This document shows, one piece after another, positions 2,413 through 62,430 of a DNA stretch of 64,000 bases. A program made the position numbers and the translations under genes. Positions within the stretch are counted from its first letter, which is position 1; the number at the start of each line of letters is the position of its first letter. The stretch is from Hypanus sabinus (taxonomy: Eukaryota). Under the pieces are notes generated by a model. That model ran no database searches. It saw only the letters and a program-made list of their open reading frames with translations, and was not told the DNA's origin. The stretch is taken from the NCBI RefSeq assembly GCF_030144855.1, contig NC_082720.1, positions 72,788,001 through 72,852,000 of the forward strand. The letters are read 5' to 3'.

Positions 2413-3537
2413 TTAGAAACATTCTGAATCTTCTTTGTTAGCTTTTTTTCATTTTGATTCAGATAGTGTTGTGGTTTAGACCATGTTATTTTCTATAAGT
2501 TATATGAGAGGTCATTTACCTTTTCATAACACTATAATTTAAAAAATGATGTGAGGTAACTTCTTTGGTTACATGTTCTAAAGTTGTGTACACATATTGA
2601 GGCTTGTTGTCATCCTGAAATTTGGTTCCCTTGACATCAATGGGACTAAATATACTGAGATGAGAATGATTAGTGTCCTACATTTGTACACGTTTGTACT
2701 TAAGATGGGAAGAAATCAGATGCAACATAGATTTGGTTCAGCGAGAAGGGCTTCTGTTTTCTGAGGTGGAAGCAATTTCTTTCCTTGTGCCAATGTGCAC
2801 GCAATTCCGCCAAATAACGTTCAACACCTTGGGTCCTTTCCAATGCATTATTTCTGCTGTATGGACATGTTTTTGGGTAATTATCCACTCATAGTGCATA
2901 ATAAGTCACAAACCACTCCCAGATTCCACAGCGTACAGCGGTTATCACTGGTACACAAGTAATTGATCAAAATCAGGAAACAATTTCAGATCTGGTTATT
3001 TATACAGGAGGTAGCGAGTACTCAATTGTTTAGTACAGTATATTCAAGGCTAACATCATGTCCAAGATGTTGCCAAGGTGCAGCAAAATTTTATTGGAAC
3101 ATCAGTGATGGTATTGACTGACAGAGTAAGTACAAAGAGAAGCCTGCAGCTTCACTGCTTCCAACTCCTGCTTCTGTTTTATTGCTCTCTCATATGCTCT
3201 TGTGATAAGTACATTTCAGTCTCAAAACTTTAACTGCCTAGAGATGTGCATTTTCATTTTTTTTTTAAATGACATCTCTTTCCAAATCATTGAAACTTCA
3301 GATAAATGCCAGTGTCAATGCCTGCTAAAGGGGACACCAAGTCTGCTTTGGGATCTAAAGTTAATTTTGGTATAACCAGCTTAATTTTTATTCCAGAACT
3401 AGCTACGACTGTATAGTCTCCTAACAAGACATGAAATCATTCAATTCTAATTAAATGCATAGTACTGGGAGCATTGTCCAAGACTTTAGACTAACACTTA
3501 CTTCTAACGTTTCCCAATCAATTTATCACTGCTTAGG

Positions 3538-3860
3538 TCATCATCATCATGTGTCATGTTGTGTGACATGGGCGATCATTGTCTTGCATCGGTACCATGA
3601 TTATTTTTGGTAAAGTTTTCTACAGAAGTGGTTTGGCCTTCTTCTGGGCAGTCGTATTCAATATTCTTCAGAGATTGTTTGCCTGGTGTCAGTGGTCGCA
3701 TAATCAGGACTTGGGATGCGCACCACCTGCTCCCATGGCTTCACATGACACAGTGAGGGGGGAGGGGCTACACTTTGCCCAAGGATGACCTGAAGGCAGC
3801 AGAGGGAAAGAGCGCCTGACTTCTTCTTTGGTAGAGATGTATCTCTGCCTCTTCACCCAA
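3538..3860 (-). mobile_element. SINE-like repeat with (CAT)n tail and RTE-like 3' motif
   Basis: (CAT)4 at 3538-3550 and agaagtggtttggccttcttc, resembling RTE/BovB-type tails as recalled. Confidence 0.4.
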
Positions 3861-4399
3861 CAGCTTAGGTCCAATGTGTAAAATGGGATGAAAAGGGAAG
3901 CAAGAATGCCAGGCTTGCAGAGCTTTTCAATTAGTTAATAGATTCCTCTTTGACAATAATTTGTTTAACAGGAAAAATTAATACTGTCTACCTGAAGCTG
4001 AACGAACCTGCAACCTGCAAAACTACTTCATGAGCTTGCATGTTGATTTAATTTCCAGAAATTTGAAAAAAAATACCCCACCCTGTGAAGCATGTAGGAT
4101 TATCTGCTTTTCAGGAGAGGATCTGGTCTGCTCTTAACCCAGTTGTGTCCTAACCAAATAGTTGCTGTGTGAAATTATTGCTCGTCATAGCATAGATAGA
4201 CTTTGATGATCTAAAGTTCAAGGTGGGATATCTGGTTTACAACCCAAGTGGGGTTAAAATCAGATTAGTCTGGATTAGTTTGGCAGTCACGAGATTGGAA
4301 AATTAAATTCAGTTCGAGAAATGAGGTAATGAATTTGAGAAAGGAAACTAAGGCATGTGAGTAGCCTCTGAAAAGCCTAGAGGAATATGACGTCCACCA

Positions 4400-4657
4400 T
4401 AAAGGATCCTCGCCATTTGGGGCAGAGCTTCCTCTCATTATTCCCATCAGGAAGAAGGTACAGGAGCCAGAAGACGCATGCTCAGTGATTAAGGACAGCT
4501 TCTTCCTCTCTATCATCAGATTTCTGAATGATCCATGAACACTATGTCATTATTTCTTTTCTGTACACTATTTATTCATTTTGTAATTTATTGTATTTTA
4601 TGTTTTTGAATAGTACCATTGCCACAAATGAGCACATTTCATTGATAATAAATCTGA
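4400..4657 (+). mobile_element. Old Rex1/Babar-like LINE 3' fragment; its tail resumes at 16793-16825
   Basis: Degenerate LPSGRRY/SFFP region (attcccatcaggaagaaggtacaggagc..agcttcttcctc). Tail ataataaatctgattctgatt after 16800. Confidence 0.6.
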
Positions 4658-4871
4658 GAAAACCTGCAGATTCTGGAAATCCAAGTAACATGCACAAAAT
4701 GCTGGAGGAACTCAGCAGGCCGGACAGCATCTATGGAAAGGAGTAAACAGACAACTTTTCGGGCCAAGACCCTTCCTCAGTCCTGAAGAAGGGTGTCGGC
4801 CCGAAGCGTCAACTATTATTCTTTTCCGTAGATGCTGCCTGGCTTTCTGAGTTCCTCCAGCAGTTTGTGGG
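4658..4871. mobile_element. Palindromic PLE-derived mini-element with two back-to-back hammerhead motifs
   Basis: ~85-bp inverted arms (cacaaaatgctggaggaactcag... / ...ctgagttcctccagcagtttgtg) centred at ~4781. 22-bp exact TSD at 4636-4657 and 16793-16814. Confidence 0.85.
4778..4815 (+). ncRNA. Minimal type-I hammerhead ribozyme motif (mutated)
   Basis: CAGTC-CTGAAGA-A-GGG-TGTCGG-CCC-GAA-GCGT-C-AACTA. Family consensus is CAGTC-CTGATGA-A-GGG-N6-CCC-GAA-ACGT-C-GACTG. Confidence 0.7.
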
Positions 4872-5166
4872 TTTGACAAGGAGCTTGACGAGGATGGTTT
4901 GGACCAAGGTGCTAGAGTACCAGAGTCTGGAACCGAGACACAGTATCAAGCTGGAATGAAAACTGAGCAAAAATGGAACGCCAAACGATATCTCTACTTT
5001 GGCTTACGAATGAGCACTGACCCTCAGTTTAGCTGCTCCTTAGATACTCAATTCTTGGCCCCCAAAACATATCTGCCAATTATTGGGACCGTCCTGAACC
5101 CTTAAAGGGGTTACACTGGAGCATCTAAAAACTGGAAGCTGGCATGGGTAAGAGCACCTTGTAACA
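4872..5166 (-). repeat. 3' LTR of the Gypsy element
   Basis: Roughly 80% identical by eye to 16501-16786 over the first ~100 nt, with a shared exact block gagacacagtatcaagctggaatga. Starts TGTTAC on the minus strand after a purine-rich PPT-like tract. Confidence 0.85.
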
Positions 5167-5199
5167 GGACACTGCTCCGCCCATCCACAGCCGACTCCT

Positions 5200-5720
5200 G
5201 ATGGACCTAGCTGGTCAGAGAGATGGTGATGGTAGACATGGATGAGAGCCAGATCGAAGATGTCTCTTTCAGGCACCCAGCACCACTCCTTGGGTCCTAA
5301 TCCTTCCCAGTCCACGAGGTATTGACGCACACCCCGAACACTATGCGAGTCCAAGATTCTTCTCACTGTGAAGACTTGTTCTCTATTGATGAACCCAGGT
5401 GGTAGTGGGGCTGATGGTGATGGGGCTAAGTGTCTGGTGCAGACTGGTTTTAATTTAGAGATGTGGAAGGTGGAATTAATTTGTAGGGTCTTAGTGAGCA
5501 GCAAGATGTAAGCACCAGATTTAATTTCCTCAGGACCTTGAAGGGTCCAATGAACTTGGGTGCCAACTTTTTAGACTCCACCCAGGGAGGCAAATCATGA
5601 GTGGACAGCCAGACCTGTTGCCCAGGCTTCAAAGCATGTTCCTGTCTTCCCCTTCGGTTCGTCATGTGTTTTCGCCTTCTGGGTGGAGGCCAGGGAAATC
5701 TCTCTTGCCCAAATCCATTT
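5200..5720 (-). pseudogene. Gypsy integrase C-terminus (GPY/F module) and chromodomain
   Basis: [21 protein letters not shown], and VRRILDS..QYLVDWEGLGPKEWCWVPERDI. Confidence 0.9.
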
Positions 5721-16500: not shown

Positions 16501-16786
16501 TGTGATGAGAGACCTTGACAAGGATGGTTTAGACCCAAGTGCTGGAGTATCCGAGGCTGGAATTGAGACACAGTATCAAGCTGGAATGAGAACTGAGGGA
16601 AAGCAAAATGCTGGATGATATGGCTAGACGAACCTCAGTTAAATACAATCCTTGGTGCGCAGAACATGATTGCCAACTAATGGGACTGTCCTGAACCCCT
16701 GAAGTGGCCACGCTACTTGGCCCTGCTCCAGAGAGTTAGAGCATCTAAATCCCGGAAGCTGGCACAAAAGGGAGCGTTCTGTCACA
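16501..16786 (-). repeat. 5' LTR of the Gypsy element
   Basis: TGTGA...TCACA inverted termini and homology to 4872-5166. TATTTAA on the minus strand at ~16639-16645. Confidence 0.9.
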
Positions 16787-16961
16787 GTGTATATTTCATT
16801 GATAATAAATCTGATTCTGATTTTGATTGTAGGAGCAGGAAGATGATGCTACACCTACATAAAAAGCCTAGGGATAGGACAGGAGGAGTATTGTGTGAGG
16901 TTTTGATCACTACACTGCAGTAAAGTTCACGTACAAAGGGAATGCAAAAGTGATATGTGAG

Positions 16962-23375: not shown

Positions 23376-23443
23376 TCCATCGGGGATAGGAAAATTATTC
23401 CCTATTTCTCATAATTCTTTATTAAACAATGTTCATCCCCAGT

Positions 23444-23635
23444 AACACACACAAAATGCCAGAGGAACTCAGTATGCCAGGCAGATCTGTGGAGAGAAAT
23501 AAGCAGTTGAAGTTTGGGCTGAGATCTTTCATTGGCCCAAAATGTCTTGATTGATGCTGTCTGACCTGCTGAGTTCCTCCTGCATTTTGTGTGCATTGCC
23601 CTGGAATTCCAGCATCTGCAGAATCTCTTGTGTTA
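23444..23635. mobile_element. Palindromic PLE-derived mini-element (internally deleted)
   Basis: Arms acacacaaaatgccagaggaactcag / ctgagttcctcctgcattttgtgtg, plus ttccagcatctgcagaatctcttgtg. Confidence 0.8.
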
Positions 23636-24564
23636 AAGATGCAAGTCAACCAGTTCAGGCATTCAGAAACATTCAAGAACAAAATCATTTCATCTATTTT
23701 ACAAGTAATTTGTCACTACTAAAAAAGTTAAACATTTCAAAAACATGTTAAACTTAGTCAATTAAAGTTTACTAAAATGCCTTTTTCCCTCAGAGCCATC
23801 CTTCTCCATTCTAGTGAGTAACCTTATTCACCTTCAGCTGACAAAGTCCCCATGGAAACCACAGAAACTTTCTAGCATGTACTGCTCCATCAGTGTACAG
23901 TAGAAAAGTAGAGTGCCAAGTGGCCTATTTGCTGGACAATATTGTGGCGATTTTTCAGCAAAGCCATTTGTGATTATATGGATATCCACATTGGACTCAC
24001 TTTGGAAATCTGTCATTGCCAAATAATCTTGAAGCAGACAGAAACTAAATTTATCAGTAAAGAAGCCATAATATATCCCAGTTTTTAAAACTCGAGGCAG
24101 CAGTCAACGCTGGGACTATATGAGTACAGGAGTGTACCAACCTCCAGTTGTGCTTGTTTCCAGAGATTCTGTTCCACTGGGTTTTAATGAGTACAGGTGA
24201 GTGTAACATGCCCACTAAGCTCACACATGTATAGTGCTGGTGATTAGAGAACACACTTTCCCACTTATTGTTTCATTTCTTCTTCATCTCAGCACAGTTT
24301 GATTCACTCTTCAGATCATGCCTAATGCCAAGTTTTTATTTTAAGGGTTTGTATTGGGATTCAGACATGTTCCAAATCACATTTAAAATTGGTAAAGATA
24401 ATTTTTAAGTTAAATCCAGTGGAATGCATTGGAATGCATTTAGCGGTGTTATTCTGAAGGGATGCAGAACATGACACTGCATTGTGTCTATAACAAAACT
24501 GTATCTCACTGCTGGATTAACTATTTTTGTCCTGGTGTTATGTGAAATGGTGCTTTTATGGAAC

Positions 24565-25520: not shown

Positions 25521-25747
25521 AATTCTTAAGTAGAAAGTAATTCTGTTTTCATTATTTGTGAAGTAGTACAGTAGAATGTACTTTCCAAAATGGAGGCTGT
25601 TAAAGAAAAATAATGAAGGAAGGTAATAAAGGAAAATGGGACATGCAACTTCTTTAATACCTTTCACAATTTTAGGATATCCCTGTGCATTACATCCTTT
25701 GACAGCAATGTCCTAGAAATACAAAGTGATAACCAAAATATCTGCAT

Positions 25748-25963
25748 AAGAGATTAAGTAAATTCTGGAACTCCAGAGTAACACACACAAAATACTGGAT
25801 GAACTCAGGAGCATCTATATAGAGCAGAGGTTCTCATTCTTTTGTATGTCGTGGAGCAATACCATTGAGCAAGGGGTCCATGGACCCCAGTTTGGGAGCC
25901 CCTGATACAGAGGAATAAACAGTTGACATTTCAGGCTGAGACCCTTCTTTAAGACTGGAGCTG
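25748..25963 (-). mobile_element. PLE-derived short element with degenerate hammerhead, hosting a hAT MITE
   Basis: Family arm sequence and an exact 11-bp TSD AATATCTGCAT (25737-25747 / 25964-25974). Confidence 0.8.
25825..25904. mobile_element. 80-bp hAT (Charlie-type) MITE
   Basis: Imperfect TIRs CAGAGGTTCTCA / TGGGAGCCCCTG. 8-bp TSD ATATAGAG (25817-25824) / ATACAGAG (25905-25912). Confidence 0.8.
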
Positions 25964-31135: not shown

Positions 31136-31395
31136 ATAAATAAAAAAAAATTAAAAAACCCACAAAATGCTGGCAGAGCTCAGCAGGCCAGACAGCATTT
31201 ATGGAGGATGTAGTGACGACGTTTTGGGCCGAAACCCTTCATCAGGAGTTTCGGCCAGAAACGTTGTCACTACCTCCTCCCATAGATGCTGTCTGGCCTG
31301 CTGAGTTCTGCCAGCATTTTGTGTTTTTTTGTGTTTTTTGTTTTTTATTTATTTATTTTTATTTATTTCCAGCATCTGCAGGTTCACTAATGTTG
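31136..31395. mobile_element. Palindromic PLE-derived mini-element (well-preserved hairpin)
   Basis: Near-perfect arms ~31160-31235 / 31250-31325. Minus-strand CTGATGA-A-GGG-TTTCGG-CCC-AAA-ACGT-C. TSD CAACAGTATGGCA (31123-31135) / CAACTGTATGGCA (31396-31408). Confidence 0.9.
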
Positions 31396-32139: not shown

Positions 32140-33125
32140 TGTACATCTGCTTTCCCATCTATCCACCACCTTAATCAGGATAGAGTTCCTCTCATCCACA
32201 CCTATCGCCCCATGAGACTAGCACCAAACAATTCTTTACCTTGCCCCATTCTCTGCTTTCCACAGGGATTGCTCCCTCCTTGATTTCCTTGTCCATTCTT
32301 CCTTCCAAATTAATTTCCCTCCTGGCCTTTATCCCTGCAAGCGAAAGAACTGCTAAACGTGCCAATTCATCTCCTTCTTTATCTTCAACCAGGACCTCAA
32401 ACAGTCCTTCCAGGTGAGGCAACACTTCACCTGTGAGACTTTTGGGGTCATCTACTATCTCCTGTGCTCTGACGCAGGCTCCTCTACATTGGTGTGATCC
32501 AGTGTAGATTCAGGACTACATTGTCAAGCACCTTTCCTCCATCTGCAAAAAGCAGGATTCCCAGTGGACAACCATTTTAATTCCAATCTTAATTCCGATT
32601 CCGATATGTCAGCCCATGGTCTCCTCTATTGCCATGAAGAGGGCACTCTCAGGTTGGAGGAACAACACCTCATATTGCGTAGCCTCTATTCTGATGGCAT
32701 GAACATTGATTTCTTCAACTTCTATTAATTTTTCCTCTCCCCCTTTACCTACTCTTCAATTCCCTACCCTGCAACCCCTCTTAATTCCTCTCCACATCAT
32801 CAGCCTGTCAGCTCCCCATGGTGGCCCTCCTCCTTCCCTTTCTCTCATTGTCCACTATCCACTCTGATCAGATCCCTTCTTTTCCAGCCCTTTACCAACT
32901 ACAACATACAAGCTTCTTACTTCATCTCGCACAACCACCACCTGTCACCTTCTGTCACTTTCTAGCTTGTACCCCTTCCCTTTCCCCATCTTCTTATTCT
33001 GGCTTCTTTCACCATCCTTTCTGGTCCTGATGCAGCGTCTCGGCCCAAATCGTTGACTGTTTATTCATTTCCATACGTGCTGCCTGACCTGCTGAGTTCC
33101 TCTAGAATTCTAGTCTTACAACATC
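32140..33125 (+). mobile_element. Penelope-like element family 1, 3' ~1 kb (GIY-YIG endonuclease remnant and pLTR with degenerate hammerhead at ~33022-33059)
   Basis: DRVPLIHTY; QSFQVRQHFTCETFGVIY..C..LYIG; PVDNHFNS; RLEEQHLI; DGMNIDF. Then ctggtcctgatgcagcgtctcggcccaaatcgttgactg. Confidence 0.88.
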
Positions 33126-40000: not shown

Positions 40001-41150
40001 CCCATTCCTCCTACCAAATTAGTTTAAACCCTCCCCAACAGCTCTAACAAACCTGCCTGCAAGAACAAACACGAGGAAATCTGCAGATGCTGGAAATTCA
40101 AACAACAACACACGCAAAATGCTGTGTTCCACCAGCATTTTGAGTGTGTTGCTGCCTGCAAGAATATTGGTCCCCCTTGGGTTCAAGTGCAACCATTCCC
40201 TTTTGTACAGGTCATACCTCCCCCAGAAGAGATCCCAATGATCCAAGAATCTGAAGCCCTGCCTCTGAACCAGCTTCTCAGCCACACATTAATCTGCCAC
40301 ATCATCCTACTTCTACCCTCACCGGTGCACGGCACAGGCAGCATTCCAGAAATTACTACCTTGGAGGTCTTGCTTCTCAGCTTTCTGCCTATCTCTCTTA
40401 ATTCTCTCTTAAGGACCTCTTTGCTTTTCCTTCCTATTTCATTGGTACCAATGTGTACCAAGATATCTGGCTGCTCTTCTGCCCCGTCCAAAATGCTGTG
40501 TACGTGATCTGAGACGTCCTTGACTCCGGGACCTGGGAGGCAACATACCATCTGGGTGTCCCATTCACTTCCACAGAATCTCCTGTCTGTTCCTCTGACT
40601 ATTGAGTCCCCTATCACTACCTCTCCCCTCTTTTATCTCTTTCCTTTCTGCACAATGGACCCATGCTCAGTGTCAGTAACACAGTCTTTGTGGCATTCCA
40701 CTAGGAGATCCAATATGGTATACTAATTATTGAGGGGAATGGCCACGGTTGATCTGCACTAACTGCCTATTCACCTTCCAATTCCTTCTCCTGACTTTCA
40801 CTGAGCTACCCCCTCCTTCAACTTCAGGGTGAGTACTACTTTGTAAGTCCAATTGATGATCTCCTCACTCCAGCTGCTGTTCCAGATTCCTAACATGGTC
40901 TGCAAGGAGCTGCAGCTGGATGTCCTTCACATTGGTGTAGCTCCCTGGGAGACTCTGGGCTTCCCAGGACTCTAACATTTGCCATGAAGAACACACAATG
41001 GCCATTTAAACTACACTAAGTACCCCTGACGCAGTAAGAAAAAAGGGAAACGTCACAGAAACTCACCTGGACAACTTTCCCAGGGCCTGAGCTGAAGCCT
41101 GCTTAGATCCAAATCCTGACACTCCCACTCTCACCACTGGCCCATTCCCA
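37028..41150 (-). mobile_element. Near full-length decayed CR1 LINE (ORF1 esterase, APE, RT)
   Basis: ORF1 IGDSIVRGTDRRFCG..VCCLPG..HIGTN..HLNPRG. RT NYRPVS, HHGLLKEKSC, AFDKVP, FAGDMK. Tail accataagacatagg. Confidence 0.92.
40066..40151. mobile_element. 86-bp collapsed PLE-derived hairpin inserted in CR1 ORF1
   Basis: caacacacgcaaaatgctg / cagcattttgagtgtgttg. Exact 13-bp TSD CTGCCTGCAAGAA (40053-40065 / 40152-40164). Confidence 0.9.
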
Positions 41151-51205: not shown

Positions 51206-51677
51206 AACACACACAAAACACTGATGGAACTCAGCAGGTCAGACAGCATCAATGAAGAGGAATAAACAGTTGACGTTTTGGTCCTAGCGCCACCAGGTCT
51301 CAGCGCAAAACTTTGACTGCTTATTCCTCTCCATAGAGCTGCTTAGTTGCTCCAGCATTTTTGTTTTATTTTATTGTGATGCAATGCAGAATAAGCCCTT
51401 CCAGCCCTTTGAGCCACACCACTCAGCAACGAGCCAATTCTAATCCTAGCCCAATAACGGGACAATTTTCAATGACCAATTAACCTACCAACCTTTGGTA
51501 GGTACCACATGGTCGTGGGGAGAGCCTACAACCTCCTTATAGGCAGCATCAGGGATTGAACCCAGGCTGCCTGCGCCTGTACTCTGAAGTGTTGTGCTAA
51601 CGACTATGCCACCGTGCCAGACCATATTTTGCCTGTGTTACTCTGGAATTCCAGCATCAGCAGAATCTCTTTTGTTA
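51206..51677. mobile_element. Palindromic PLE-derived element with an HE1-like SINE (~51362-51622, minus) inserted in its right arm
   Basis: Arms 51206-51280 / 51300-51360 plus 51625-51670. Probable TSD ATGATCACGTGGCT / ATGATACCTTGGCT (3 mismatches). Confidence 0.75.
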
Positions 51678-60955: not shown

Positions 60956-61520
60956 CAGGTTGAGTACCCCTTATCCAAAATGCTTGAGGCCAGAAGTGTT
61001 TGGATTTCGAAGTTTGGAATATATTTTGAGATAGCTTGGGATTTCTGACTCTGAATTTATGTGCTACCGGTAAGCAGTCTTTGTCTTCTACTTGTTCATC
61101 ACACGTTTTACTGTCCATATGTATGACATACCATTAATATAATGAACATAAAATGAGTGCAGGGTAATAAAATCAGTGCAGCCCATTGGGAGAATACCTG
61201 AATCAGCTGTTGAACAATAACAGACAACGACAGGCTTTGTGTCTTTCCCTATGATTCATGTTTTGATTAAAAGGTCACAGTACCCTCTACTTGTATTTTA
61301 CTGTTTTTTTTAGGTTTCATTTAACGTATAAAAACAATCAGCCTTCTAAACTTGTTCTGGTGTTAGATTTTCATCAGCGACGATTTTCGCAAATTTATCA
61401 ATGAATTTCTCTGCTGCTTTGTTGATTAGCAGACAGAAGCTTTATCTTTAATTATTTTTAAATCTTTGAAAATTTAATGCCGTGCCTTTTCTTAAATTTG
61501 TGCAACCAGCCTGGTGAGTA
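60956..61520 (-). mobile_element. pogo/Tigger (Tigger4/Zombi-like) DNA transposon fragment
   Basis: Terminus CAGGTTGAGTACCCCTTATCCAAAATGCTTG. Minus strand 61347-61520 encodes YSPGWLHKFKKRHGIKFSKI..KAAEKFIDKFAKIVADENLTPEQV. Confidence 0.85.
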
Positions 61521-62430
61521 CTCGCACAAAATGCTGGAGGAACTCAGTAGGCCAGGCAGCAACTATGGAAAAGAGTAAACAGTTGATGGTTTGGGCCGAG
61601 ATGTTCATCAGGATTGGAAAGGACAGGGAGAAGTCAGGATATGAAGGTGGAGGGAAAGGAGAAGTGCAAGGTAGCAAGTGATAGATGAAACTGGGAGAGG
61701 GGGAGGGGCGAAGAAAAGAGCTGGGAAGTCGATTGTTGAAAGAGATAAAGGGCTGGCAAACAGGGGACCTGATAGGAGAGGACAGAAGATCATGGGAGAA
61801 AGGGAAGGGGAAGAGCAGCAGAGGGAGGTGATGGGCAGGTAAGGAGATAAGGTGAGAAAGGAATGTAGGAATGGGGAATGGTGAAGGAGAGGAGGGGGAA
61901 TTCAATTACTGAAAGTTCAAGAAATTGATATTCATGCCATCAGGCTGGAGGCTACCCAGGTGGAATATAGGGTATTGCTTCTCTAACCTGAGTGTGGCCT
62001 CATGTAGCAGTAGGGGAGACTATGGACTGGCACATCAGAATGGGAATGGGGCCACACTCAGGTTGGAGGAGTAACACCTTATATTCCATCTGGGTAGCCT
62101 TCAATCTGATGGCATGAACATTGATTTCTCGAACTCCTGGTAATCACCCCCACCTGTCCTACACAATTCCCCATTCCTGTTTCCCTCTCTCACCTTTTCT
62201 CCTTACCTGCCCATCACCTCCCTCTGGTAATCACCCCCACCTGTCCTACACAATTCCCCATTCCTGTTTCCCTCTTTCACCTTATCTCCTTACCTGCCCA
62301 TCACCTCCCTCTGGTAATCACCCCCACCTGTCCTACGCCATTTTCCATTCCTGTTTCCCTCTCTCACCTTATCTCTTTAACTTCCCATCACCTCCCTCTG
62401 GTACTCCTCCCCCTTCCCTTTCTTTAACCT
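61521..62430. mobile_element. PLE family 1 3' ends in inverted arrangement: 61521-62048 minus (hammerhead remnant ~61579-61617) and 62049-62430 plus
   Basis: ~61912-62000 is the reverse complement of ~62050-62135 (ATLRLEE*HLIFHLGSLQSDGMNIDF). Confidence 0.85.
62137..62403 (+). repeat. Three 87-bp tandem repeats in the PLE 3' UTR
   Basis: Units start at 62137, 62224 and 62311 (ctggtaatcacccccacctgtcctac...). Confidence 0.95.

What the first reader, a model, noticed from the sequence alone, without database searches (positions are those of the whole stretch)
4658..4871. Hairpin mini-retroelement carrying two back-to-back minimal hammerhead ribozymes, one per strand
Seen: the centre of this ~170-bp palindrome reads, on the + strand, CAGTC-CTGAAGA-A-GGG-TGTCGG-CCC-GAA-GCGT-C-AACTA. 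On the - strand it reads CTGAGGA-A-GGG-TCTTGG-CCC-GAA-AAGT-T-GTCTG. Pooling the copies at ~905, 4780, 16965, 22665, 25925, 28525, 31215, 33025, 58700 and 61580 gives CAGTC-CUGAUGA-A-GGG-N6-CCC-GAA-ACGU-C-GACTG. That is stem I (CAGTC/GACTG), the CUGANGA/GAA core, a 3-bp stem II, a loopless palindromic ACGU in place of stem III, and cleavage after C. Established: Penelope-like elements carry minimal type-I hammerheads with a palindromic helix III that act as dimers. Inference: a non-coding, retrozyme-like family whose RNA from either strand could self-cleave or form a long dsRNA hairpin. No single family-1 copy here is fully intact; many lesions are CpG transitions (CCCGAAA to CCCAAAA).
Basis: partly seen in the sequence, partly recalled or inferred. 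Interest (0 to 1): 0.8.

Follow-up and report, generated by a model that had tools for sequence, protein, structure and literature searches.

The report
Inverted twin of Penelope retrotransposon tails
The palindrome is an old, decayed insertion of two head-to-head copies of the 3' tail of a Penelope-like retrotransposon, each carrying that element's known minimal hammerhead ribozyme motif; it is one of many thousands in this genome and is an ordinary, already described kind of feature.

Summary
Window 4650-4873 is an inverted repeat whose arms are 79% identical.

The unit is not a separate non-coding hairpin element. It is the 3' terminus of autonomous Penelope-like elements (PLEs): an RT plus GIY-YIG ORF, a CT-rich 3' UTR, the minimal hammerhead, then a tail of about 95 or 130 nt.

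The hairpin is the standard PLE "inverted 5'-truncated twin", made in one insertion event:
- Young examples are flanked by 10-14-bp target duplications.
- Their junctions vary.
- 16 of 18 scorable pairs have one short and one long (+~35 bp "tail") outer end, as the finding does.

Both hammerheads here are damaged: A15.1 is changed to G in one arm, and the helix III palindrome and stem I are broken in the other. On any transcript each hammerhead faces its own complement (predicted hairpin -127 versus -11.5 kcal/mol for the ribozyme fold of a young copy), so self-cleavage is unlikely and a dsRNA hairpin is likely.

True retrozyme-like tandem arrays of the same unit, with 93- and 99-bp periods, exist elsewhere in the genome. 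The scan already holds 269 notes on this in the same genome, and an earlier follow-up (s1-195646) reached the same verdict. It is a new member of a known kind, of low interest.

The parts
4650..4785 (-). Left arm: PLE 3'-terminal unit (hammerhead plus tail) ending at the LONG 3' end. It may reach about 4645.
   Evidence: nhmmer profile positions 2-135, E=2e-33. Aligned to young copies L002 and L030.
4778..4873 (+). Right arm: the same unit ending at the SHORT 3' end. It may reach about 4876.
   Evidence: nhmmer profile positions 2-96, E=2e-20. Alignment.
4778..4815 (+). Hammerhead motif of the + arm: CAGUC / CUGAAGA / A / GGGU-GUCG-GCCC / GAA / GCGU / C / AACUA. Damaged: A15.1 is changed to G and two stem I pairs are lost.
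4748..4785 (-). Hammerhead motif of the - arm: CAGGA / CUGAGGA / A / GGGU-CUUG-GCCC / GAA / AAGU / U / GUCUG. Damaged: the helix III palindrome is broken and the 5' strand of stem I comes from the junction.
4778..4785 (.). Head-to-head junction CAG-TC-CTG. The right arm keeps its own CAGTC. The left arm starts at C3 of CUGA. CAG/CTG is a 3-nt overlap.
   Evidence: The 2-nt-spacer TC/GA junction type is seen in 11 of the first 50 exact-edge junctions listed genome-wide, and in L012.
4650..4682 (-). The ~33-35-bp PLE 'tail' extension, present on the left arm only.
   Evidence: 3' ends are bimodal at profile positions ~95-110 and ~132-138. Pairs are short/long in 16 of 18 cases.
32303..33111 (+). 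A longer copy in the same window: remnant of the GIY-YIG endonuclease C-terminus (32303-32722), CT-rich 3' UTR, then hammerhead and tail (33023-33111).
   Evidence: tblastn with the L061 ORF: aa 802-945, 49% identity, E=5e-32. nhmmer hit.
61520..62134 (-). Another copy: hammerhead and tail (61520-61615), 3' UTR, endonuclease remnant (61909-62048), with an inverted endonuclease fragment at 62045-62134.
23439..23636 (.). Second hairpin twin in the window: short end on the left, long end on the right, junction inside the hammerhead.
31158..31394 (.). Third hairpin twin: short end left, long end right.
40066..40153 (.). Fourth hairpin twin with very short arms: long end left, short end right, flanked by the target duplication GCCTGCAAGAA.
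51206..51361 (.). Fifth, decayed hairpin twin, with both ends of the short type.

Best explanation
The locus is a dead-on-arrival product of Penelope-like element (PLE) retrotransposition: two severely 5'-truncated copies of the element's 3' terminus, joined head to head in a single insertion event.

Shown:
- The unit (CAGTC, minimal hammerhead, then ~95 or ~130 nt) lies about 290-330 nt downstream of the stop codon of an RT + GIY-YIG ORF.
- Insertions end at two discrete 3' termini about 35 bp apart, which is the PLE 'tail'.
- Inverted pairs nearly always combine one short and one long terminus.
- Young pairs are flanked as a whole by 10-14-bp target duplications.
- Junctions differ from pair to pair and cluster at or inside the hammerhead.

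Inferred: the PLE ribonucleoprotein nicks both target strands and primes cDNA on both, as shown in vitro for the Anolis element PAc (PMC11167929). One strand starts at the upstream internal initiation site and the other at the downstream one. Both cDNAs stop or switch template near the structured hammerhead region and are joined, here through a 3-nt CAG/CTG overlap.

The hammerhead belongs to the parent element. In the literature it is a protein-assisted or dimer-dependent self-cleaving motif whose role in the PLE cycle is unsettled.

In this copy the two motifs are passengers. Both are mutated, and in any transcript the hammerhead would be locked in a ~100-bp imperfect dsRNA hairpin with its own complement. 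The only plausible activity of the locus is as a hairpin-RNA (small-RNA) precursor if it is transcribed.
For: Link to PLE coding sequence:
- Longer copies run from the hammerhead upstream through a CT-rich 3' UTR into ...CGLLYIGETxRRLGDRFxEH...LQPDGMNIDFSNFR*.
- L061 has a 946-aa ORF followed by the same 3' UTR, hammerhead and tail.
- That ORF aligns at 48% identity over 728 aa to P0014, including YIDD and the GIY-YIG region.
- P0014 and P0001 carry RVT_1, and P0014 carries GIY-YIG above its cut-off. 730 homologues were found, and the listed ones carry RVT_1/DUF8422/HTH_animal, some also GIY-YIG.
- The endonuclease fragment has 155,822 first-look candidates in the genome.
- The window itself holds endonuclease remnants upstream of two hammerhead units.

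Two 3' termini: 50 units end at profile positions 85-112, 30 end at 125 or beyond, and only 1 ends between.

Inverted pairs:
- 15 short pairs and 4 long pairs were found in 264 kb.
- 16 of 18 scorable pairs are short/long; binomial p = 2.7e-4 against 0.47 expected.
- The control count of tail-to-tail pairs is 2.

One-step insertion: target duplications flank whole hairpins in L009 (13 bp), L018 (12), L021 (12), L022 (13), L012 (10) and window 40066-40153 (11).

Junctions: 331 exact-edge junctions occur genome-wide with spacers of 0-14 nt and many different sequences.

Folding: the window's hairpin transcript folds at -127 and -123 kcal/mol on the two strands, against -11.5 for the hammerhead fold of a young copy.

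Literature:
- PLE insertions often have an inverted 5'-truncated copy and a 30-40-bp tail at one end only (PMC8557442).
- PAc extends both strands from two internal start sites, and its hammerhead is protein-assisted (PMC11167929).
- Minimal hammerheads sit in PLE terminal repeats, and dual motifs on opposite strands have been noted (PMC4209133).
Against: - No clear target duplication flanks the finding's own copy. There is at best a degenerate TTGATA/TTGACA, and the copy is old (arms 79% identical).
- Pfam scores on the genome's own ORF are weak: GIY-YIG E=0.012 and no RVT_1 hit. The RT assignment rests on alignment to homologues.
- The both-strand priming model is taken from one in vitro system in a lizard PLE and was not tested here.
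- The sample of pairs comes from 264 kb that was partly chosen for hammerhead or endonuclease content.
- No RNA data could be obtained, so transcription and small-RNA production are unknown.
Confidence: 0.85

Rival explanations
1. This is an independent non-autonomous 'hairpin mini-retroelement' or retrozyme-like family. A ~170-220-bp palindromic unit would be transcribed, would self-cleave from either strand through its two hammerheads, and would be copied as a unit by PLE machinery.
For: A ~100-nt minimal unit (CAGTC, hammerhead, short tail) does behave as a module. Many single copies start within ~6 nt of the hammerhead. The same unit forms 93- and 99-bp tandem arrays like non-LTR retrozymes. 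The CAG-TC-CTG junction recurs: 11 of the first 50 exact-edge junctions listed.
Against: Junctions are heterogeneous, with spacers of 0-14 nt, and many lie inside the hammerhead. Both outer ends sit at PLE reverse-transcription start sites with short/long asymmetry, which a unit copied from one RNA would not give at its 5' side. Long-armed versions grade into ordinary PLE copies that carry an endonuclease remnant. On one RNA only one arm is a sense hammerhead, and it is sequestered by its complement. The recurrent junction is explained by the 3-nt CAG/CTG overlap.
Confidence: 0.07
2. This is a DNA-level foldback or MITE-type element, or a palindrome made by replication or repair, and it merely contains PLE-derived sequence.
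For: It has a palindromic structure with short arms. Terminal inverted repeats flanked by target duplications resemble a MITE.
Against: Target duplications vary in length from 10 to 14 bp. The arms end exactly at the two PLE 3' termini and differ in length by the ~35-bp tail. Arm lengths and junctions vary continuously. No transposase-type terminal motif is shared by the two ends.
Confidence: 0.03
3. These are two independent PLE insertions that landed head to head by chance or by target preference for an earlier copy.
For: The family is extremely dense, with 22 units in this 64-kb window. PLE endonucleases can cut in their own terminal sequence (PMC11167929).
Against: Head-to-head pairs (15) far exceed tail-to-tail pairs (2) in the same data. 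Target duplications flank the whole pair in young examples. The short/long asymmetry is not expected for independent events. Arms of a pair share subfamily variants, for example L012.
Confidence: 0.05

Closest known systems
Minimal hammerhead ribozymes (min-HHRs) of metazoan Penelope-like elements (Cervera & de la Pena 2014, PMC4209133; per the finding's own premise they act as dimers)
   Same: [quoted passage not shown] Helix I is short (4-5 bp). Helix III is reduced to a palindrome (ACGU), which implies action as a dimer. The motif lies in the PLE terminal region, occurs in thousands of mostly solitary copies, and is sometimes found as dual motifs on opposite strands.
   Different: Helix II is 4 bp with a tetraloop, whereas Schistosoma elements have 6-8 bp. 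The host is a cartilaginous-fish-like genome; the closest named protein is from Chiloscyllium punctatum at 67% identity, and I did not find this particular family described. The locus copy is mutated. No activity data exist.
PLE insertion architecture: inverted 5'-truncated copy plus a 30-40-bp tail at one end (Craig et al. 2021, PMC8557442; Frangieh et al. 2024, PMC11167929)
   Same: It shows heavy 5' truncation, head-to-head inverted copies, two 3' termini about 35 bp apart, a tail on one side only, and target duplications around the whole structure.
   Different: Here both arms are truncated to about 95-135 bp, so the insertion is almost nothing but two hammerhead-plus-tail modules. The junctions cluster at the hammerhead. 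I did not see that clustering described in the papers I read.
Non-LTR retrozymes: tandem type-I hammerhead repeats giving small circRNAs (Cervera & de la Pena 2020, PMC7229834; Li et al. 2026, bioRxiv 10.64898/2026.07.22.740005)
   Same: The hammerhead type and PLE ancestry are the same. This genome has 93-bp and 99-bp head-to-tail arrays of the very same unit.
   Different: The finding is an inverted pair, not a tandem one, so the two motifs are never on the same RNA strand and cannot form the tandem dimer. No circRNA evidence exists.
Twin-priming 5' inversions of LINE-1
   Same: An inverted segment is created during one retrotransposition event by priming on both DNA ends, with microhomology at the junction.
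   Different: It involves a different retroelement class and endonuclease. PLE pairs are head-to-head duplicates of the same 3' region with two distinct start sites, not an inversion of the 5' part.

Membership tests
PLE minimal hammerhead (min-HHR) | Conserved core boxes CUGANGA and GAA in type-I order | tested here: met
   Exact in both arms and in more than 13,000 genomic copies of the 33-mer at up to 2 mismatches.
PLE minimal hammerhead (min-HHR) | [quoted passage not shown] | tested here: met
   An A followed by GGG...CCC is present in all 7 aligned sequences. Helix II is 100% paired.
PLE minimal hammerhead (min-HHR) | Helix I present and supported by compensatory changes | tested here: met
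   5 of 6 stem I pairs show changes on both sides across PLE homologues, and the register is specific when compared with slid controls. The 99-bp tandem variant has CUGUC/GACAG where the main family has CAGUC/GACUG. The alignment is small (7 sequences, 3 independent types). In the finding's own arms stem I is partly broken.
PLE minimal hammerhead (min-HHR) | Helix III reduced to a palindrome (positions 15.1-16.1), allowing a dimeric ribozyme, followed by H17 | tested here: inconclusive
   The family consensus ACGU-C meets it, as do homologues L062, L064 and L065. The two arms of the finding do not: they read GCGU and AAGU.
PLE minimal hammerhead (min-HHR) | Location in the terminal (pLTR / 3' UTR) region of an RT + GIY-YIG element | tested here: met
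   The position is the same in homologues L062, L063 and L065, with an inverted or direct upstream copy.
PLE minimal hammerhead (min-HHR) | Self-cleavage after H17, as a dimer or protein-assisted | not testable with these tools
   No raw RNA reads were available, only assembled contigs of uncertain type.
Rfam hammerhead families | Score at or near the gathering threshold of an Rfam hammerhead covariance model | tested here: not met
   No hammerhead hit at gathering scores or at E up to 10 for the locus, nor for exact young copies and a homologue. This is expected for motifs without a helix III hairpin; PMC4209133 needed a custom descriptor.
Penelope-like element (EN+) | [quoted passage not shown] | tested here: met
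   The 946-aa ORF in L061 aligns to P0014 across the RT (YIDD) and the endonuclease. P0014 has RVT_1 (29.4 bits, just under the 29.6 cut-off) and GIY-YIG (25 bits against a 22.6 cut-off). On L061's own ORF, Pfam gives only a weak GIY-YIG hit (E=0.012).
Penelope-like element (EN+) | Insertion signature: 5' truncation, adjacent inverted 5'-truncated copy, 30-40-bp tail at one end | tested here: met
Non-LTR retrozyme | Head-to-tail tandem repeats, each with a type-I hammerhead on the same strand | tested here: not met
   The locus is head to head. Tandem arrays of the unit exist elsewhere: L060 has two arrays of about 3 units of 99 bp, and there are 163 exact junctions genome-wide with 93- and 99-bp spacing.
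MITE / foldback DNA transposon | Fixed terminal inverted repeats with target duplications of a fixed length, amplified from a common palindromic master | tested here: not met
   Target duplications vary from 10 to 14 bp, junctions and arm lengths vary, and the outer ends are unequal.

The most novel reading that the evidence does not exclude
The hairpin twins may be the in vivo footprint of a dimeric PLE ribonucleoprotein that primes cDNA on both target strands. On this reading one protomer always uses the upstream and the other the downstream internal initiation site, which would explain the near-obligate short/long asymmetry. The hammerhead region would act as the preferred stop or template-switch point, which would explain junctions and 5' ends piling up at or inside it and never at the cleavage site. 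That would give the ribozyme fold a structural role in PLE integration separate from cleavage. It would also seed the genome with very many dsRNA-hairpin loci that could feed small-RNA silencing of the family.
Probability: 0.3. Interest if true: 0.5.

Novelty: new member of a known kind. Interest (0 to 1): 0.22.

Why it matters
For genome annotation, these palindromes should be masked as PLE fragments. They should not be called ribozyme genes, miRNA-like hairpins or a new element class.

For PLE biology, the family is unusually large and has young, exact copies. This gives a natural data set on three points:
- use of the two reverse-transcription start sites;
- priming on both target strands;
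- where cDNA synthesis stops.

The short/long asymmetry, the whole-pair target duplications and the absence of 5' ends at the ribozyme cleavage site agree with the in vitro picture from a lizard PLE, in which uncleaved RNA is the template and both strands are extended. The agreement extends that picture to a distant vertebrate. The locus itself has no evident function.

Tried and rejected
- **Rfam, at gathering and permissive thresholds.** The locus, exact young copies and a homologue gave no hammerhead model hit, only chance miRNA-like hits on the palindrome.
- **Pfam on the genome's own ORF.** It gave only a weak GIY-YIG hit and no RVT_1. The RT call had to come from homologues.
- **Random genome sampling.** Tallies therefore rest on the window plus 61 loci (264 kb), partly chosen for hammerhead or endonuclease content.
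- **RNA evidence.** The look-up of sequencing runs returned only assembled contigs of guessed type, from 14 coded organisms and 12 studies, and no run on record as RNA. Contigs cannot show RNA ends, so read laying was not spent.
- **Conserved structure in the tail downstream of the hammerhead.** RNAalifold gave -6 kcal/mol and no compensatory pair.
- **Predicted homodimer.** The minimum-energy dimer of two units was not the double-hammerhead fold. This is uninformative.
- **Self-BLAST detection of inverted pairs.** It missed the short palindromes and found only the long-armed pairs. The short ones were paired from profile hits instead.
- **Automatic classification of upstream extension.** It was noisy because minor families have divergent CT-rich 3' UTRs, so the 5'-end hot spot is reported from reading the list by eye.
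- **Homologue look-ups.** P0001 returned no DNA, P0085 was not on record, and L066 and L067 showed no canonical hammerhead in the DNA available.

Full report
**1. The observation**

Window 4650-4873 is a real palindrome. The repeat finder reports inverted arms at 4680-4746 and 4816-4882, 79% complementary. A profile built from young copies places one unit on the minus strand at 4785-4650 and one on the plus strand at 4778-4873.

Both arms carry an exact CTGANGA-A-GGG-N6-CCC-GAA. The window has 4 such matches against 0.07 expected from shuffles.

The window is vertebrate-like: GC 41% and CpG observed/expected 0.25.

The reversed control gives none.

**2. What the unit is**

Thirty 3-kb loci centred on exact copies show several families. 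They share the hammerhead exactly but differ upstream and in the tail.

Homology upstream of the hammerhead stops at variable points, up to about 600 bp. In the longest copies it runs through a CT-rich stretch into an open frame ending ...CGLLYIGETxRRLGDRFxEH...LQPDGMNIDFSNFR*, which looks like a GIY-YIG endonuclease C-terminus. Pfam sees it only weakly (E=0.064).

Using that fragment as a query gave 155,822 first-look candidates in the genome, and one place has a 974-aa open frame.

That locus, L061, has a 946-aa ORF (2446-5286). It is followed by about 290 nt of CT-rich 3' UTR, a slightly decayed hammerhead, and the long form of the tail. The ORF has 730 homologues at E of 1e-10 or better. 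The closest named one is from the shark Chiloscyllium punctatum at 67% identity, and the listed homologues carry RVT_1/DUF8422/HTH_animal, some also GIY-YIG. It aligns at 48% identity over 728 residues with P0014, across the RT (YIDD) and the CCHH/GIY-YIG region. P0014 scores on both RVT_1 and GIY-YIG in Pfam.

The window itself holds endonuclease remnants upstream of two of its hammerhead units. They lie at 32303-32722 (49% identity, a different PLE lineage) and 61909-62048.

The unit is therefore the 3' terminus of autonomous Penelope-like elements, not a separate non-coding family. Two PLE lineages whose endonuclease regions are only 49% identical share essentially the same hammerhead. That argues for constraint on the motif in the active elements.

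**3. The hammerhead**

The consensus reads (C)AGUC / CUGAUGA / A / GGGU-CUCG-GCCC / GAA / ACGU / C / GACU(G). This matches the min-HHR of metazoan PLEs described in PMC4209133:
- the core boxes;
- a G10.1-C11.1 pair;
- a short helix I;
- a palindrome in place of helix III, implying action as a dimer.

PLE homologues from other assemblies (L062, L063, L065, L064) carry a hammerhead at the equivalent place. Their helix III (ACGU-C) is the same but their stem sequences differ.

On a seven-sequence alignment, helix II is paired in 100% of cells. Five of six stem I pairs show changes on both sides, and the signal disappears when the partners are slid. The alignment is small, with only three independent types.

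Rfam's hammerhead models do not detect even exact copies. This is expected for motifs lacking a helix III hairpin.

In the finding itself both motifs are damaged. The plus arm has G at 15.1 and two lost stem I pairs. The minus arm has a non-palindromic AAGU, and the junction supplies its stem I 5' strand.

**4. Why it is a hairpin**

In 264 kb (the window plus 61 loci) the profile finds 120 units.

Their 3' ends are bimodal. Fifty end at profile positions 85-112, thirty at 125 or beyond, and one between. These are two termini about 35 bp apart. That matches the 30-40-bp PLE "tail" and the two adjacent internal reverse-transcription start sites found in vitro for the Anolis element PAc (PMC8557442; PMC11167929).

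Fifteen short head-to-head pairs were found, plus four long-armed ones. Only two tail-to-tail pairs were found. Sixteen of eighteen scorable pairs combine one short and one long end, where 47% would be expected if the ends were independent (binomial p = 2.7e-4). The finding conforms: its left arm is long and its right arm is short.

Young hairpins are flanked as a whole by target duplications of 10-14 bp. Examples are L009, L012, L018, L021, L022 and window 40066-40153. Each pair is therefore one insertion event.

Junctions differ between pairs. They lie a few nucleotides upstream of CUGA or inside the motif. Genome-wide, 331 junctions keep both hammerhead edges exact, with spacers of 0-14 nt of many sequences. 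The finding's CAG-TC-CTG type accounts for 11 of the first 50 listed and is explained by a 3-nt CAG/CTG overlap.

Long-armed pairs grade into ordinary copies that carry an endonuclease remnant. In three of four of these the longer copy carries the long end.

All of this is the published PLE insertion architecture: an inverted 5'-truncated copy with a tail at one end (PMC8557442). [quoted passage not shown]

The arms of the finding are 79% identical, so it is an old insertion. No convincing target duplication survives around it.

**5. What the locus can do**

On any one transcript only one arm is a sense hammerhead. The other arm is its complement. ViennaRNA folds the 227-nt transcript of either strand into a long imperfect hairpin, at -127 and -123 kcal/mol, which buries the core. 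The ribozyme fold of a young unit is worth -11.5 kcal/mol and is not even that unit's minimum-energy fold.

There is no tandem partner for dimer formation, and both motifs are mutated. Self-cleavage is therefore unlikely. Only assembled contigs of guessed type were available.

**6. Retrozyme-like relatives**

The same unit does occur in the arrangement that defines non-LTR retrozymes. L060 has two arrays of about three 99-bp head-to-tail units. The genome holds at least 163 exact junctions of short end to hammerhead, arranged in runs with 99-bp or 93-bp spacing of up to about ten units.

In the 99-bp family stem I is CUGUC/GACAG. This is a compensatory change relative to CAGUC/GACUG.

These arrays fit the recent proposal that animal retrozymes are non-autonomous PLE derivatives (bioRxiv 10.64898/2026.07.22.740005). 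They are rare next to the dispersed copies, and the finding is not one of them.

**7. Unexplained points**

Truncated single units and hairpin junctions pile up within about 0-6 nt upstream of CUGAUGA or inside the motif. None was seen at the cleavage site. The templates were therefore uncleaved RNA. This agrees with PMC11167929, where hammerhead mutants did not affect insertion.

I could not tell whether this reflects RT stalling or template switching at the GC-rich stem II, or an RNA 5' end near the Inr-like TCAGTC.

**8. Verdict**

The hammerhead identification and the dsRNA idea are right. The "hairpin mini-retroelement / retrozyme-like family" reading is replaced by a standard one-step inverted twin insertion of PLE 3' ends.

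The scan already holds 269 notes on this feature in the same genome, and one follow-up (s1-195646) reached the same conclusion.

It is a new member of a known kind. Interest is low, with some value as a large natural data set on PLE integration.

Noticed in passing
L060:575-868 and L060:2719-3002; genome-wide list (e.g. G000:C18:6540483-6541115, G000:C35:76107782-76108643): There are head-to-tail arrays of a 99-bp unit, and elsewhere a 93-bp unit, each made of the minimal hammerhead plus the short tail. This is retrozyme-like. The 99-bp family has the compensatory stem I CUGUC/GACAG.
   Followed up: partly
window 25827-25906: An ~80-bp insertion with an internal palindrome (GGGGTCCATGGACCCC) splits a PLE tail unit (25745-25827 and 25906-25957). 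It may be a small MITE-like element.
   Followed up: no
window ~4628-4650 and ~16785-16810: The string CATTTCATTGATAATAAATCTGA occurs at both places. At 16785 it is followed by a TTCTGA-like short repeat. At 4628 it abuts the long-tail end of the finding. It is probably the 3' end of another repeat, used as a PLE target; PLEs are reported to favour AT-rich and microsatellite sites.
   Followed up: no
window 61909-62134: Two PLE endonuclease C-terminal fragments lie head to head (61909-62048 minus, 62045-62134 plus). This is a long-armed version of the same inverted-twin architecture.
   Followed up: partly
L061:1877-2036 and L061:2170-2336: A 167-bp inverted repeat (82% identity) lies just upstream of the 946-aa PLE ORF. 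It looks like an inverted duplication of the element's 5' region. No hammerhead or tail copy was found upstream of this ORF.
   Followed up: partly
L006 (oriented copy) positions ~1-690: A C-terminal fragment of a LINE-type reverse transcriptase (…YRALVKPHLEYCVQFWSP…) lies directly upstream of a 5'-truncated PLE copy. It looks like an unrelated neighbouring retroelement.
   Followed up: no
L064:1-5526 and L066:102-4394: PLE homologues from other assemblies sit in head-to-tail ORF tandems. L064's spacer carries a hammerhead with CCGACGA (C at position 4) and a 6-bp stem I. L066's spacer has long GT/GA microsatellites and only a non-canonical hammerhead-like motif whose helix III is the palindrome GAUC.
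   Followed up: partly
(runs X1-X24): Words from the 571-bp 3' UTR-hammerhead-tail stretch are held by runs from 14 differently coded organisms in 12 studies. This suggests the family is shared by related species.
   Followed up: no
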